IMG/VR virus record: IMGVR_UViG_3300032782_000001
Location: 124,001 to 188,000 of that record
Direction: 5' to 3' (one strand)
DNA length: 64,000 nucleotides
Made by a program: the position numbers and the translations under genes. A model generated the notes under the pieces. The model saw nothing but the letters and a program-made list of their open reading frames with translations, was not told the origin of the DNA and did no database searches. Shown here in pieces: positions 15,935 to 19,549 of the stretch; position 1 is the first letter of the stretch, and every line of letters starts with the position of its first letter.

Positions 15935-16755
15935 TGCAAGGCATTAAACTCATCTTTAGGTCCAAGGAAAATCGAGTTCTCGCCTTCAAGAACGCAGATG
16001 ACTGGGACCTTCCTTCTTGTTCCGTAGAACATGTGGACGAACTCCGAAACTCTACGAGGAATCTTTTCAAGAAGGTAACGGGTGCATTTCCGGATAAAGA
16101 TCCCATCCCTGTGTATCGCGGATACGACGATGAATATGGGGTTTCTTCGTCGTATATTTCGGATTGGACAGGGATCCCGAAAACTAAGAAAGGTCAGAAA
16201 GCAGACTGGGTTGATGTTATCGATATATTATCCAGTAAATGGGGACTTTTTGCCCGGGATGCTTTCCACCGGCTCAAATTGATTAACCGTCCTAAGCTGG
16301 ACTTGGAAGATCTCTACACAATCAGCAAGAAAGCTTTAAAAGACGGATCTCGTCATGCAAGCGAAGGCGTCGACAAAGTCATTGACGAAATTGTTTTCCT
16401 CATGGAGATCAATAAATCTGAGGCAGTAGACAACCTGCTTCAGCATATGGATGTAACCAAACTCCATGCTGATATCTTGTCAGCTGCACTGGCGGTACTA
16501 GAAAATTACGATTTACCTTCAAAAGCAAGATTCGTCGAAGATGCCAACATCATCATTCAGGAAATCGATGCCTTACGTCCAAAAATGAAACTTAAAGATG
16601 AATATGGGAGAATTTTATCTCATGATGTCCGGGGGGATGCCTTGAAATATTATCGCAAGAAAGCTGTTGAATTCGGAAATCTTCTGCGAGAAGGAAAACT
16701 CGGACCAGGCCTCCATCGAGGCGGAGCTCCCATCCCCCGCAGGAAAGCAAATTGA
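15931..16755 (+). CDS. Hypothetical protein (degenerate Nudix-like N-terminus)
   Basis: RVLAFK..DWDLPS, lacks an intact Nudix box. Confidence 0.5.
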   Translation: MMQGIKLIFRSKENRVLAFKNADDWDLPSCSVEHVDELRNSTRNLFKKVTGAFPDKDPIPVYRGYDDEYGVSSSYISDWTGIPKTKKGQKADWVDVIDILSSKWGLFARDAFHRLKLINRPKLDLEDLYTISKKALKDGSRHASEGVDKVIDEIVFLMEINKSEAVDNLLQHMDVTKLHADILSAALAVLENYDLPSKARFVEDANIIIQEIDALRPKMKLKDEYGRILSHDVRGDALKYYRKKAVEFGNLLREGKLGPGLHRGGAPIPRRKAN

Positions 16756-17036
16756 ACTATCAGGAAAAGCAAAGACTCATTCAACAGGCATTGAAAGATA
16801 TGTCTGACGGAAAGAGGAATCTTCTCAGTAATCCTTTCGCCGGTCTCATGCCTCCGAGATTGGATCCTTCAGAAGTCGCCAGAAAAATGTTTCCTATTGA
16901 GCCCCTTCCACAAGGAGCGGTGCCAGTATACTTTCTGCCTCAATGCATAAGATGTGATGGTCATTACGAAGATTTGAAAAATCATTCAATCGAAGAATGT
17001 AATCTTTGCATCGTTGTTGATGTGATGGAGTCATGA
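16752..17036 (+). CDS. Small Zn-binding protein with VMES tag
   Basis: CIRC...H...EECNLCIVVDVMES*. Confidence 0.65.
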   Translation: MNYQEKQRLIQQALKDMSDGKRNLLSNPFAGLMPPRLDPSEVARKMFPIEPLPQGAVPVYFLPQCIRCDGHYEDLKNHSIEECNLCIVVDVMES

Positions 17037-17284
17037 ACGGTCCGAAACGACTCCACTACAGTGATTCTAACAAGTTGACTGCATCCGTCAATAAAATTAG
17101 CCATCTCATGACCAACCACGATTGGGAAGATAAGTCCGAACCAGAGAAGAAAGCGGGCGGACTTATCATTTCTAAAATCGAATTGGAATGTCGTAAATGC
17201 GGATTGGTGGCCGGGTTGCTTCCTCTTGAGGAGTTGGATCGCGATTGCGACATTGTTTTAGTGCGCTCCGTGATGGAGTCATAA
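17033..17284 (+). CDS. Small Zn-binding protein with VMES tag
   Basis: HDW...CRKC...DCDIVLVRSVMES*. Confidence 0.65.
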   Translation: MNGPKRLHYSDSNKLTASVNKISHLMTNHDWEDKSEPEKKAGGLIISKIELECRKCGLVAGLLPLEELDRDCDIVLVRSVMES

Positions 17285-17350
17285 ATTTCTGTTGTAATGT
17301 TGTATCACTAGATAACCCAATCAGGAGGAAGTCATGTAGACTTAGAAATT

Positions 17351-17414
17351 CGGGCGGCAGGGGTGAAGGCCCCGCACCGGTAGGTTAATGGGTTCAAGTC
17401 CCAACCCCGACCCG
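17351..17414 (+). ncRNA. tRNA-like element/pseudo-tRNA directly 5' of tmRNA
   Basis: T-arm TGGG-TTCAAGT-CCCA; ends CGGGCGG/CCGACCCG pair; no clear anticodon arm. Confidence 0.35.
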
Positions 17415-17432
17415 TCTTACCTTTTCCAATTC

Positions 17433-17806
17433 GGGCCTGATCGGCTTCGACTGGGGAAGAAAGAACGATCTGCGTGCAGGCGGCGCTCGATCCGCCATAA
17501 CCAATCGAGCCGACACAGCTGCCAACGACAACGGCGCCCTCCGCATCGCGGCCTAAAAAACCGCGCGGATGTCTTCCCGGCGAAACTGCTTCCAGTAACC
17601 GGATGAAGGCACGAACCCAAGAGGAAGCTGGCCGTGGGAGTAACCCTCCTTTTATCCCGACGCCTCAGCCGGGAAGGCGAGATCAAGTCTAGGCTGACAG
17701 TGCGGAAAGACGCGCAAACTCAGTCGCAGGGGATACGGCGACTACGCACGTGAACGAGGGTTGTTTGGACAACTTCAGGACGCGGGTTCGATTCCCGCCA
17801 GGTCCA
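17433..17806 (+). ncRNA. ssrA: tmRNA, tag (A)ANDNGALRIAA
   Basis: GGGCCTG/CAGGTCC-A acceptor with G3-U70; 5' GA..GGCTTCGAC; T-arm GCGGG-TTCGATT-CCCGC; tag ORF 17521-17556. Confidence 0.95.
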
Positions 17807-17820
17807 CAAGGTGTTTGGAA

Positions 17821-18009
17821 ATGCATCAATGGGAAGGTTGGGTATTTCCCAATCCAAAAGACGGTAAAGTCTTAGCTTGGGTCATTTGTGGTAGATGCAG
17901 TTATTGTGTCCATTATGTAAATCATCAGCCCGGGTTCACACCCCCGATTCCACCGGACAATCCTCCTGATTGCAATGAACGATTGGTGAAATGGGTAATG
18001 GAACAATGA
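17821..18009 (+). CDS. Small Zn-binding protein with VMEQ tag
   Basis: MHQW...CGRC...DCNERLVKWVMEQ*; start moved downstream of tmRNA. Confidence 0.6.
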   Translation: MHQWEGWVFPNPKDGKVLAWVICGRCSYCVHYVNHQPGFTPPIPPDNPPDCNERLVKWVMEQ

Positions 18010-18215
18010 CTCGTATTGAACTTTTGAAGGAAATTCAAGAACATCCGGAGAGACACCGGCATGACTTTGACGCGCTCCAAGATTGTTGCTTTATTGATGG
18101 TGCTATTGATCTCGGAGTCATGCAAGCTCACGAGAACGTCAACCTCGGGATGAATGGTGGGATTCGCTGCGACGTGACTTCAGGGCCTTGCGCTTGTGGA
18201 GCTTGGCATCGATGA
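18006..18215 (+). CDS. Small Cys/His-rich hypothetical protein
   Basis: ATGA overlap; ends CDVTSGPCACGAWHR. Confidence 0.6.
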   Translation: MTRIELLKEIQEHPERHRHDFDALQDCCFIDGAIDLGVMQAHENVNLGMNGGIRCDVTSGPCACGAWHR

Positions 18216-18425
18216 GTGGATTCCATTTCACTGCCACGCCGGTTGCGCCGGCAGTGAAATGGAATCCAAATGCACCACAAGCGTCGTCGTCCCAAGAACC
18301 GTCGTGCCGGATGCTTGCTTTGTAAACCGTGGAAGAGTAACGGAGTTAATCAGGAGAAGCCTTCGATTCGGAGGAAACTCCAAGAGAAGTTGGAAGTTTT
18401 GGTTTGCTCCGTGTAACCTGCTTCC

Positions 18426-19082
18426 ATGAAGCTCAAAGACATCAATCTTCTCGACGTCGGTAACACGATCCAGATCGTCGGTGCTGTTTATGCCGACGAC
18501 AAGAAAGTCCTGATCTGTCTCTTTCCGGAGGATCGCGGAGAGATCCAGACTGAGCAGGACCACTCATATGGCGACTGCATGGGGACTGCCACTTCCCAGC
18601 TCGTCACCAAGGACAAGAAGTACCTGGATATTGATGTTCTCGACATGGATGCCGAGGACTGGTTGAAGTTCCTGAAGCAAACCGACGTCATGGAGACCGA
18701 GATTCTGACGAAGGCATCTGATGGGACGCTGGCGAAGGCCATCTACCGGAAGAGCCAACGTCAAATCGACCAGGTCGTGAGTTGGCAAGTCTTCAAGCGC
18801 GATAGCTACACTTGCCGTTACTGCGGCAACGACGCCGTTCCTCTGACGGTGGATCATCTCGTTCGATGGGAAGAGGGCGGTCCAACGATCGCGGATAACC
18901 TCGTTGCTTCTTGTAAGAAATGCAACAAGACCCGCGGGAATCTCTCCTACGAGGAGTGGCTCCGACATCCACGATACCTGGAGGTCTCCAAGAGCCTCAC
19001 CGTGGAAGTGAGGGCTTTGAACGAAGATCTCGTCGGCAAAATCCGATTCATCAAGAGGAACGTTCACGTTCGGACTCGGTGA
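18426..19082 (+). CDS. HNH endonuclease domain protein
   Basis: RDSYTCRYCG, TVDHL, NLVASCKKCN. Confidence 0.88.
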   Translation: MKLKDINLLDVGNTIQIVGAVYADDKKVLICLFPEDRGEIQTEQDHSYGDCMGTATSQLVTKDKKYLDIDVLDMDAEDWLKFLKQTDVMETEILTKASDGTLAKAIYRKSQRQIDQVVSWQVFKRDSYTCRYCGNDAVPLTVDHLVRWEEGGPTIADNLVASCKKCNKTRGNLSYEEWLRHPRYLEVSKSLTVEVRALNEDLVGKIRFIKRNVHVRTR

Positions 19083-19261
19083 AACGACTTAGCTATTCTG
19101 ACCTGAGGGAAGCCAAGACGGCGGCCCTGGAAAGGCTGGCGAAGGCCATTGCTGTTCGGATTCCCTCAGGTCAAATATCGGAAAAAGAGTATCGTAGTCG
19201 TCTCATCTACGCCATAATGAGGAAAGAAAAAGAAATCTCCCGTGCACCCCGTAATAGATAA
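19079..19261 (+). CDS. Small basic hypothetical protein
   Basis: GTGA overlap with HNH stop. Confidence 0.45.
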   Translation: MKRLSYSDLREAKTAALERLAKAIAVRIPSGQISEKEYRSRLIYAIMRKEKEISRAPRNR

Positions 19262-19276
19262 TGATGAGGTCGGACC

Positions 19277-19549
19277 GTGGTCCGTCGAAATCCGAAACAC
19301 CTCCCAAAATCCTTCAATCTCCAGGGTCCAATCCACATCCCTGAGGCTTCGAACCTTGGAGATTCAGTTGCGGCAGCGAGTGTGGAAATGGCTGCGTTCA
19401 ACTCGCCCCCTCAAGGGGAACTCATCTACCAAAAATTCCACGCGTTGACTCGCTGTCCACAATGCGATTCCATCATCGATCCCAGTAAAAGTGATCACGG
19501 TTCAGAAGAATGTAACCGTCGAATTGTGCTTCAGGTTATGGAGTCCTGA
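19277..19549 (+). CDS. Small Zn-binding protein with VMES tag
   Basis: CPQC...H..EECNRRIVLQVMES*. Confidence 0.65.
   Translation: MVRRNPKHLPKSFNLQGPIHIPEASNLGDSVAAASVEMAAFNSPPQGELIYQKFHALTRCPQCDSIIDPSKSDHGSEECNRRIVLQVMES

What the first reader, a model, noticed from the sequence alone, without database searches (positions are those of the whole stretch)
16752..19549. Zn-finger plus VMES cassette attached to variable N-termini around the tmRNA
Seen: four small ORFs here (also 45957 and 61090) carry CxxC followed by a Cys 8-9 residues before VMES, with an intervening or preceding His (e.g. CPQC..H..EECNRRIVLQVMES, CIRC..H..EECNLCIVVDVMES). Their N-termini are unrelated. Inference: a shuffled adaptor module with variable cargo and a constant docking end.
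Basis: partly seen in the sequence, partly recalled or inferred. Interest (0 to 1): 0.7.

Follow-up and report, generated by a model that had tools for sequence, protein, structure and literature searches.

The report
Shared C-terminal tag in huge phage
The four small zinc-finger genes flagged here belong to about 140 genes (one in five) of a 436-kb phage whose proteins all end in the same short tail (...V..VMES); related huge phages share this tail, and what reads it is unknown.

Summary
The window lies in a complete 436,316-bp phage genome. In that genome 140 of about 659 genes end, exactly at the stop codon, in a 12-residue tail with consensus [C/S/T]-[DEN]-[ELM]-x-[IVL]-[VI]-x-[EQ]-[VI]-M-[ED]-S. 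VMES closes 58 ORFs, while no unrelated 4-mer closes more than 4. None of 1970 random internal 12-mers reaches the score threshold, and only 3 internal sites do genome-wide.

All synonymous codons are used, and the tail persists in relatives with 39-57% GC, so selection acts on the protein.

Another cysteine-rich class, about 58 cysteine-free proteins and a RuvC-like resolvase carry the same tail. With tails trimmed, the proteins are almost all mutually unrecognisable.

The tail drifts by lineage: position -3 is M, Q or V/L/I.

My best reading is a C-terminal recognition tag read by one shared partner. I found no partner, and the one complex prediction gave no answer. I found no published description.

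The parts
16752..17036 (+). Small ORF (94 aa from TTG 16752). CxxC...H...C(-12)xxC zinc-knuckle class. Ends IVVDVMES, and its stop overlaps the next start (ATGA).
   Evidence: It is its own cluster representative, P0251.
17033..17284 (+). Small ORF (83 aa). CRKC...DC(-12). Ends LVRSVMES, with no His between the Cys pairs.
   Evidence: Its only trimmed-tail BLASTP relative is a paralog at genome position 86911.
17821..18009 (+). Small ORF (62 aa), starting 12 nt after the tmRNA. CGRCSYC...DC(-12). Ends LVKWVMEQ, and its stop overlaps the next start (ATGA at 18006).
19277..19549 (+). Small ORF (90 aa from GTG 19277; an internal ATG lies at 19388). CPQC...H...EEC(-12). Ends IVLQVMES. It lies between two HNH endonuclease genes.
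   Evidence: The AF2 model of its last 52 aa shows a beta-hairpin plus a C-terminal helix at residues 38-51, pLDDT 75.
35484..36209 (+). RuvC-like Holliday-junction resolvase (241 aa) carrying the tail ...DTVKEVMES after its conserved ...LLxWL end.
   Evidence: phrog_159, E 5e-15. Most homologs lack the tail. In the AF2 model the core has pLDDT >90 and the tail helix 232-240 has pLDDT about 59-72.
45957..46328 (+). ORF (123 aa) ending ...HSCKELRILEVMES. It has the tail with Cys at -12 but no CxxC.
61090..61431 (-). ORF (113 aa) between the DnaB-like helicase and primase-like genes. CRDC...H...DSC(-12). Ends IVDTVMSS.
60473..61129 (-). ORF (218 aa) ending ...AHVKTIMEA, a tail variant without a Cys pattern.
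4894..5424 (-). ORF (176 aa) ending ...SKIATEVMDS.
10156..10317 (-). Short ORF (53 aa) ending ...IIPISSIMES (Ser codon AGC). It is the weakest member.
28221..28568 (+). ORF (115 aa) ending ...EVIVALVMDS. It overlaps a longer ORF in another frame (28214-28744), and I did not settle which of the two is the gene.

Best explanation
The conserved element is a protein-level C-terminal tag. It is a short amphipathic helix, often opened by an [S/T]xEE capping box or by a zinc-ligand Cys at -12. Its hydrophobic stripe lies at positions -8, -7, -4 and -3, and it must end in [VI]-M-[ED]-S-COOH.

I propose that one shared partner reads this tag, with the free carboxy-terminus forming part of what is recognised. 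This would give a fifth of the phage's proteins a common fate. The tagged proteins are the small, fast-evolving, tightly packed accessory genes.

The fate I favour is hand-over to a proteostasis machine, either for timed removal or for tethering to an unfoldase or protease. The phage carries a conserved Cdc48-D2-like AAA+ ATPase, a conserved MoxR AAA+ and VWA-metallopeptidase pair inside the tag-rich module, a DnaJ and a tmRNA.

Shown: the tag exists, is strictly terminal, is selected at the protein level, is modular across unrelated proteins, and is conserved and drifting across a clade.
Inferred: that a partner reads it.
Guessed: who the partner is and what follows.
For: 1. Strict terminal position. 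140 tags sit exactly at the stop codon, against 3 internal matches in all six frames and 0 of 1970 random 12-mers.
2. Protein-level selection. Every synonymous codon is used at V, E/D and S, including AGC and AGT. The tag persists in relatives of GC 0.40, 0.50 and 0.57 and in a variant form at GC 0.39.
3. Modularity. 0 of 140 proteins hit Pfam and 4 hit PHROGs. With tails trimmed there are only 9 BLASTP pairs among the 140. There are at least three sequence classes.
4. The RuvC-like resolvase carries the tag, while most of 120 homologs end in unrelated acidic tails. Only its nearest relative has ...LKEVMDS. In the model the tag is a peripheral, lower-confidence helix.
5. Orthologs keep the tag. 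Where orthologs are detectable, most retain a tag-like end aligned end to end.
6. Lineage drift of one position. Position -3 is M in G000, G001 and G002, Q in G003, and V/L/I in G006 and G007, while [ED]-[SA]-COOH stays. This is what co-evolution with a reader would give.
7. The tagged set is a biological class. The tag occurs on 30-33% of genes under 120 aa and on 0 of 109 genes of 320 aa or more. None of the core replication proteins in the window (PolA, DnaB-like, RecA, sigma factor) carries it. Tagged genes form runs of up to 9, with a median upstream gap of -4 nt.
8. Candidate readers exist and are conserved in G001-G003: AAA2, MoxR, and a DUF2201 metallopeptidase-VWA protein with HExxH and a DxSxS MIDAS motif.
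Against: - No partner has been identified.
- The genome has no ClpP, Lon, S41 tail-specific protease, proteasome or Pup ligase.
- In the zinc-knuckle class the tail helix supplies a zinc ligand (Cys -12). In the 52-residue model it is the only helix, so there its hydrophobic face may simply be the core of a mini-fold.
- A polar ...ES-COOH end does not resemble known bacterial C-terminal degrons such as ssrA ...LAA.
- There are no expression, localisation or stability data. The host is unknown.
Confidence: 0.5

Rival explanations
1. No reader exists. All tagged proteins descend from one hugely expanded family of small proteins, and the C-terminal helix is simply the last recognisable structural element, either a fold core or a self-association helix.
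For: - In the CxxC...C class the helix starts at a zinc-ligand Cys and is the only helix of the mini-domain.
- Jumbo phages are known to expand small zinc-ribbon families. Bacillus phage G has about 35 copies (PMC7824862, read).
- Tagged genes lie in tandem arrays, as duplicates would.
Against: - A fold core does not need to end exactly at the stop codon with an invariant polar M-[ED]-S (140 terminal against 3 internal).
- The tail sits on a RuvC-like resolvase whose homologs mostly lack it.
- It also sits on about 58 proteins of up to 316 aa without any Cys pattern.
- Position -3 changes in step within each lineage.
Confidence: 0.2
2. One reading: the proteins are adaptors. Their variable N-terminal part binds different targets (host proteins or nucleic acids), and the constant tail docks them onto one effector machine. 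SspB's C-terminal ClpX-binding peptide, p97 cofactor motifs and poxvirus ankyrin/PRANC proteins work this way.
For: - Extreme N-terminal divergence with a fixed end, the pattern of arms-race families.
- Conserved phage AAA+ ATPases are present.
Against: - Many members are only 53-70 aa, which leaves little room for a target-binding domain besides a zinc knuckle.
- No target and no effector are known.
- An enzyme (the RuvC-like resolvase) also carries the tail.
Confidence: 0.15
3. The tail is a sorting signal that loads proteins into the capsid or another phage-built compartment. Encapsulin cargo-loading peptides work this way, and the T4 capsid targeting sequence does so at the other terminus.
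For: - Terminal position, short length and a large, diverse client set.
- Huge capsids can hold many proteins (general knowledge).
Against: - Tagged genes lie in arrays of small accessory genes at 5-120 kb and 260-272 kb, and are almost absent from the large-gene blocks at 180-260 kb and 280-320 kb.
- The phage has a sigma-70-type factor rather than the multisubunit polymerases of nucleus-forming phages, so a phage nucleus is not expected.
- There are no virion proteomics.
Confidence: 0.1
4. The signal is read on the nucleic acid or on the ribosome. It could be a ribosome-binding or coupling site for the next gene, a recombination site, or a nascent-peptide effect on termination at TGA linked to the phage's two tRNA(UCA) genes and its tmRNA.
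For: - 47 of 140 tail genes overlap the next start as ATGA. TCA is the commonest Ser codon.
- TGA ends 72% of tail genes against 50% of other genes. Without the ATGA overlaps the figures are still 58% against 41%, p 0.003.
- tRNA(UCA) x2 and the tmRNA lie next to the flagged ORFs.
Against: - All four Val, both Glu, both Asp and all six Ser codons occur.
- The tail is kept from 39 to 57% GC.
- 93 of 140 tail genes have no ATGA overlap, and all three stop codons occur.
- The DNA 15-mer has no excess outside ORF ends beyond the tail genes themselves.
- Read-through extensions show no length constraint.
Confidence: 0.05

Closest known systems
Lineage-specific expansion of small zinc-ribbon proteins in jumbo phages (Bacillus phage G, about 35 copies; Iyer et al. 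2021, PMC7824862)
   Same: A huge phage carries dozens of small, divergent CxxC zinc-finger proteins in arrays. Their function is unknown (transcription factors or DNA-binding proteins have been suggested).
   Different: Here the shared element is not the zinc finger but a strictly terminal tail. The tail also sits on proteins with no Cys pattern and on an enzyme. The set covers about 140 genes per genome. No sequence relation to the phage G family was tested.
C-terminal tethering and degradation peptides of AAA+ proteases (ssrA tag ...ALAA-COOH; SspB C-terminal ClpX-binding peptide)
   Same: A very short motif at the extreme C-terminus, read together with the free carboxylate. It gives many unrelated proteins a common route to one machine. 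The phage also encodes a tmRNA (tag ANDNGALRIAA).
   Different: The end is polar ([ED]-S) rather than nonpolar. The motif is encoded in the genes, not added. No ClpP, Lon or S41 protease is present in the phage. No reader is known.
Cargo-loading peptides of encapsulins and encapsulation peptides of bacterial microcompartments
   Same: Short terminal peptides or amphipathic helices that address diverse cargo to a protein shell. Encapsulin shells share the phage capsid fold.
   Different: There is no sequence similarity. The client set is two orders of magnitude larger. Gene positions do not point to virion proteins. Not tested experimentally.
Viral families with variable N-terminus and constant C-terminal docking domain (poxvirus ankyrin-PRANC/F-box-like proteins)
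   Same: A large, fast-evolving paralogous set in a large virus, with a constant C-terminal end that would dock onto one machine.
   Different: PRANC is a folded domain of about 60 aa that binds a known host partner (Skp1). Here the constant part is 8-12 residues and the partner is unknown.
C-terminal tripeptide or tetrapeptide address signals of eukaryotes (PTS1 -SKL, -KDEL)
   Same: A fixed 3-4-residue signal that must be at the very end of the protein and is read by one receptor on many clients.
   Different: There is no compartment, receptor or homology here. This is an analogy only.

Membership tests
beta-beta-alpha / treble-clef type zinc finger (for the CxxC...C class, including the four flagged ORFs) | Zinc knuckle CxxC in a beta-hairpin followed by a helix that supplies further ligands | tested here: met
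   The alignment of 42 members has C22 and C25 nearly invariant and C41 (-12) invariant. The AF2 model shows a hairpin at the CxxC and a helix at 38-51 starting at the third Cys.
beta-beta-alpha / treble-clef type zinc finger (for the CxxC...C class, including the four flagged ORFs) | Four conserved metal ligands | tested here: inconclusive
   Only three Cys are conserved. The fourth ligand would be His 3-5 residues before Cys -12 in some members, Cys -9 in others, and is absent in some, such as window 17033-17284. Metal binding cannot be tested here.
beta-beta-alpha / treble-clef type zinc finger (for the CxxC...C class, including the four flagged ORFs) | Significant structural or sequence match to a described zinc-finger family | tested here: not met
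   The best Foldseek E-value against PDB is 3.5. The top hits are UBZ and C2H2 fingers but are not significant. There is no Pfam family at E<=0.001.
RuvC-like Holliday junction resolvase (window 35484-36209) | Sequence match to the family and an RNase H-like fold | tested here: met
   phrog_159 E 5e-15 over residues 1-154. Homologs carry PF02075. The AF2 model has pLDDT 90.8 with a beta-beta-beta-alpha-beta-alpha core. Catalytic residues were not checked.
ssrA-like / ClpX-type C-terminal degron | Nonpolar extreme C-terminus (..LAA-like) and a cognate ClpXP/ClpAP or tail-specific protease | tested here: not met
   The end is M-[ED]-S. There is no ClpP, Lon_C or Peptidase_S41 in the phage genome. 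Host proteases could not be examined.
Sliding-clamp binding motif (QL[SD]LF-type C-terminal peptides) | Consensus Q-L-x-L-F/L at the terminus | tested here: not met
   The tail consensus [EQ]-[VI]-M-[ED]-S shares only the first two positions. Binding was not tested.
Encapsulin cargo-loading peptide / capsid targeting signal | Binding of the terminal peptide to the inner face of an HK97-fold shell; presence of clients in particles | not testable with these tools
   No proteomics or structures are available. Gene positions argue weakly against it.
Any curated protein family (Pfam-A, PHROGs) for the tail itself | Profile match covering the tail | tested here: not met
   0 of 140 members match Pfam at E<=0.001. 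4 of 140 match PHROGs, and none of those matches is through the tail.

The most novel reading that the evidence does not exclude
A clade of huge phages runs its own proteome-wide address system. A gene-encoded C-terminal tag (...[VI]xx[VI]-M-[ED]-S-COOH, drifting to Q or V/L/I at position -3 in sister lineages) marks 20 to more than 100 small accessory proteins per genome. A dedicated, co-evolving phage-encoded reader then carries out timed destruction, tethering or delivery. This would be a viral counterpart of ssrA or PTS1-type signals, not described for any phage.
Probability: 0.3. Interest if true: 0.9.

Novelty: new variant of a known kind. Interest (0 to 1): 0.78.

Why it matters
Most genes of huge phages are small orphans with no handle for study. 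Here a fifth of them carry one common, strictly terminal, protein-level mark that is conserved across a clade.

- It groups hundreds of otherwise unclassifiable proteins into one functional set.
- It offers a simple bait, the tail peptide, to fish for the machine that handles them.
- It can be used as a sequence signature to recognise this phage clade and its accessory genes in metagenomes.
- If a dedicated reader exists, it would be the first proteome-wide sorting or turnover tag encoded by a bacteriophage. It would also be a compact tag-and-reader pair of possible use as a tool.

Tried and rejected
1. DNA-level motif. The 15-mer GTGATGGAGTCATGA with up to 3 mismatches gives 12 sites in the window against 2.3 expected. 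The excess is the tail genes themselves, and codon counts show synonymous freedom. Rejected.

2. Alternative genetic code or read-through of TGA. The genome is 94% covered by ordinary table-11 ORFs. TGA is the commonest stop. Extensions beyond the stop show no constraint. I found no reason to name another code.

3. Pfam, PHROGs, PDB and fold searches for the tail proteins gave nothing significant.

4. The nearest GenBank phage DNA shows only a tRNA match. A single-protein scan of viral contigs with ORF 19277-19549 found nothing.

5. Promoter and terminator consensus scan of 14900-20500: no excess over shuffles. No 8-mer is shared by 6 or more intergenic regions.

6. Candidate readers sought in the phage genome. 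ClpP, Lon, Peptidase_S41, proteasome and Pup ligase are absent.

7. Complex prediction of the conserved DUF2201 metallopeptidase-VWA protein with the 52-residue tail domain. No answer was obtained (score 0.00, partner pLDDT below 50). This is evidence neither for nor against.

8. Exact look-up of the MoxR-like protein on public contigs: not on record with my start codon.

9. Literature. Searches for the motif, for conserved C-terminal motifs in jumbo phages and in the huge-phage paper set found no description.

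
Full report
**What is at the coordinates.**
The window is bases 124001-188000 of a single 436,316-bp virus record with direct terminal repeats, judged complete. Between 16752 and 19549 lie four small plus-strand ORFs:
- 16752-17036
- 17033-17284
- 17821-18009
- 19277-19549

They are interleaved with a tmRNA gene (17433-17809, tag ANDNGALRIAA), another small ORF and an HNH endonuclease gene (18426-19082). Each of the four has a CxxC, then a variable loop of 13-24 residues, then a Cys at position -12, then ...[IVL]-[VI]-x-x-V-M-E-[S/Q] and the stop.

- The third ORF ends in VMEQ and must start after the tmRNA.
- The second ORF has no His between its Cys pairs.
- 45957-46328 lacks the CxxC.
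- 61090-61431(-) ends VMSS.

**It is not local.**
I scanned the whole genome for the ends of stop-to-stop ORFs of at least 50 codons. VMES ends 58 of them, VMDS 16, IMES 12 and VHES 6. No unrelated 4-mer ends more than 4.

I then built a position-specific scoring matrix (PSSM) from the last 12 residues. It finds 140 ORF ends at >=12 bits. None of 1970 random internal 12-mers reaches that score. In all six frames only 3 internal sites do, one of them 3 residues from an end.

With about 659 genes in the genome, one gene in five carries the tail. The consensus is [C/S/T]-[DEN]-[ELM]-x-[IVL]-[VI]-x-[EQ]-[VI]-M-[ED]-S. Position -7 is V or I in 85 of the 88 seed tails.

**Protein or nucleic acid?**
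Among the 88 strictest tails the codon counts are:
- Val/Ile at -4: GTC 40, GTG 24, GTA 5, GTT 5, ATC 12, ATT 2.
- Glu/Asp at -2: all four codons are used.
- Ser at -1: all six codons are used (TCA 37, TCG 16, TCC 11, TCT 11, AGC 8, AGT 5).

The TCA excess goes with ATGA stop/start overlaps (34 of the 88; 47 of all 140).

The tail survives in relatives with very different base composition:
- G001 (427 kb, GC 0.40): IMES x27, VMES x19, about 100 tails.
- G002 (393 kb, GC 0.50): VMES x17, IMES x9, about 55 tails.
- G003 (362 kb, GC 0.57): VQES x7, VQDS x4, 20-40 tails.

Selection is therefore on the peptide. A DNA or mRNA signal is rejected.

**What carries it.**
None of the 140 proteins matches Pfam at E<=0.001. 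Four match PHROGs, and only one of those families is named. With the last 12 residues removed, all-against-all BLASTP (E<=1e-3) leaves 9 pairs and 122 singletons.

By pattern there are three groups:
- A second cysteine-rich class, 'C..[AV]xRFF...C.H...[ST]xEE[FYW]xVxEVMES', about 45 genes.
- About 58 proteins with no Cys pattern, up to 316 aa.

The tail frequency depends on protein size:

| Protein size | Share with tail |
|---|---|
| under 120 aa | 30-33% |
| 120-200 aa | 25% |
| 200-320 aa | 11% |
| 320 aa or more | 0 of 109 |

None of the core replication proteins in the window has the tail (PolA, DnaB-like, RecA, sigma-70-type factor, DnaJ). Tail genes sit in tight same-strand arrays. Their median upstream gap is -4 nt and runs reach 9 genes. 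They are concentrated at 5-120 kb and 260-272 kb of the genome.

**Modularity.**
Window gene 35484-36209 is a RuvC-like resolvase (phrog_159, E 5e-15) that ends ...LLQWLTDMDTVKEVMES.
- Its nearest homolog (74% identity) ends ...LKEVMDS.
- A few homologs end ...IVESIMQK, ...EEIMRK or ...AIMDN.
- Most of the 120 homologs stop after the conserved WLE with unrelated acidic residues.

In the AlphaFold model, built from a 97-sequence alignment (mean pLDDT 90.8), the tail is a separate last helix at 232-240 with the lowest confidence of the chain.

For the zinc-knuckle class, the model of the last 52 residues of ORF 19277-19549 (pLDDT 75) shows a hairpin at the CxxC and a single helix at 38-51 that starts at Cys -12. 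Foldseek finds nothing significant. The top, non-significant hits are beta-beta-alpha zinc fingers.

So the same tail closes at least two quite different folds.

**Distribution.**
- A profile of the zinc-knuckle class searched against 1.84 billion representatives gives 92 hits at E<=0.001. Of these, 64 are small proteins matched through to their last residue, and 47 of those end VMES or IMES. The remaining hits are long multi-CxxC proteins.
- Two unrelated metagenome contigs carrying such hits have the tail on about half of their genes.
- A syntenic contig from another sample has three tails in 11 kb.
- Only 14 of the 140 proteins have detectable orthologs in G001-G003. Most of those orthologs keep a tail-like end aligned to the very end, and some lost it.
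- More distant fragments carry a degenerate form. G006 has VLES, VIES and VVES, with terminal ES enriched 4.5-fold. G007 has VVDS, VLES and LLEA.
- A 485-kb uncultured phage with only 35% PolA identity (LR745208.1) has no match to the tail profile, and serves as a negative control.

Across lineages position -3 drifts (M, Q, or V/L/I), while the acidic residue and the small last residue stay.

**Mechanism.**
Four properties together point to a recognition tag read by one shared partner:
- strict terminal position;
- a hydrophobic stripe at -8, -7, -4 and -3;
- an invariant polar end;
- lineage-wise drift of one position, and attachment to unrelated proteins.

The free carboxy-terminus would be part of what is recognised. 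This much is inference.

What the partner does is a guess. I favour routing to a proteostasis machine, because the phage encodes:
- a conserved Cdc48-D2-like AAA+ ATPase (genome 261100-262605);
- a conserved MoxR AAA+ (25877-27001);
- a DUF2201 metallopeptidase-VWA protein (29900-31387, with HExxH and a DxSxS MIDAS motif), lying side by side with MoxR inside the tail-rich module in all four genomes;
- a DnaJ and a tmRNA.

Against this, the phage has no ClpP, Lon, S41 protease, proteasome or Pup ligase. The one complex prediction I could run gave no answer (listed under tried and rejected).

The rivals, in order of my confidence, are:
- a purely structural remnant of one exploded family;
- a capsid or compartment sorting signal;
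- a ribosome-level effect.

**Comparison and novelty.**
The nearest described thing is the roughly 35-copy zinc-ribbon expansion of Bacillus phage G (PMC7824862). That expansion is defined by the zinc ribbon, not by a terminal tag shared with non-zinc proteins.

In function, the closest analogies are terminal peptides such as the ssrA tag, the SspB tethering peptide, encapsulin cargo peptides and PTS1. The defining features of those families that I could test are not met. I found no paper describing this tail.

I therefore rate it a new variant of a known kind (terminal recognition motifs; jumbo-phage small-protein expansions). There is a real chance that it is a new phage-encoded address system.

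Noticed in passing
window 15122-15198 and 15223-15296 (+): There are two tRNA genes with anticodon TCA (called tRNA-SeC by ARAGORN, plain tRNA by Rfam). The genome has 49 tRNAs and none with anticodon CCA (Trp). Yet TGA is the commonest stop codon and table 11 gives a 94% coding density.
   Followed up: partly
whole genome (G000); window tail genes: TGA ends 101 of 140 tail genes against 207 of 411 other genes of up to 320 aa (p 8e-6). Without ATGA overlaps the figures are still 58% against 41% (p 0.003). I have no explanation, and saw no constraint on what lies beyond the stop.
   Followed up: partly
window 17433-17809 (+): Phage-encoded tmRNA with tag ANDNGALRIAA. The longest frame of the next tail ORF (from 17761) would overlap its 3' end, so the ORF more likely starts at ATG 17821.
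   Followed up: partly
window 18426-19082 (+) and 19786-20349 (+): Two HNH endonuclease genes flank tail ORF 19277-19549. The first matches PF01844. The second is judged by its CxxC...HxxE...CxxCH pattern only.
   Followed up: no
G000 25877-27001 and 29900-31387 (L003:6877-8001, L003:10900-12387): A MoxR-like AAA+ ATPase and a DUF2201 metallopeptidase (HExxH) plus VWA (DxSxS MIDAS) protein with four invariant Cys. They are adjacent in G000-G003 and lie inside the tail-rich module. There are 275 hits at E<=1e-10, and every one of the 120 listed carries both Pfam domains.
   Followed up: partly
G000 313359-314855 (L018:9359-10855): An AAA+ ATPase that aligns to mycobacterial Mpa/ARC over its coiled-coil/OB and ATPase parts and to the Cdc48 D2 domain. 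It is present in this phage only among the four compared, and there is no proteasome or Pup ligase gene in the genome.
   Followed up: partly
window 28751-29953, 58229-59413, 36164-37555 (+): The phage encodes its own sigma-70-type factor (regions 2 and 4), a full DnaJ (J domain, CxxCxGxG, C-terminal domain) and a RecA.
   Followed up: no
window 28214-28744 and 28221-28568 (+): Two long ORFs overlap in different frames of the same strand, just upstream of the sigma factor gene. Only the shorter one ends in the tail (VMDS). I did not settle which is the gene.
   Followed up: no
G003 (L079-L097), G006 (L101-L110), G007 (L111-L120): The tail's position -3 differs by lineage: Q in G003 (VQES, VQDS), aliphatic in G006 and G007 (VLES, VIES, VVES, VVDS). 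In G006 and G007 the upstream V at -7 is also less fixed.
   Followed up: partly
G000 97-115 kb: About 44 of the 49 tRNA genes lie in one block, with a few tail genes interspersed (for example ends at 100927 and 105832).
   Followed up: no
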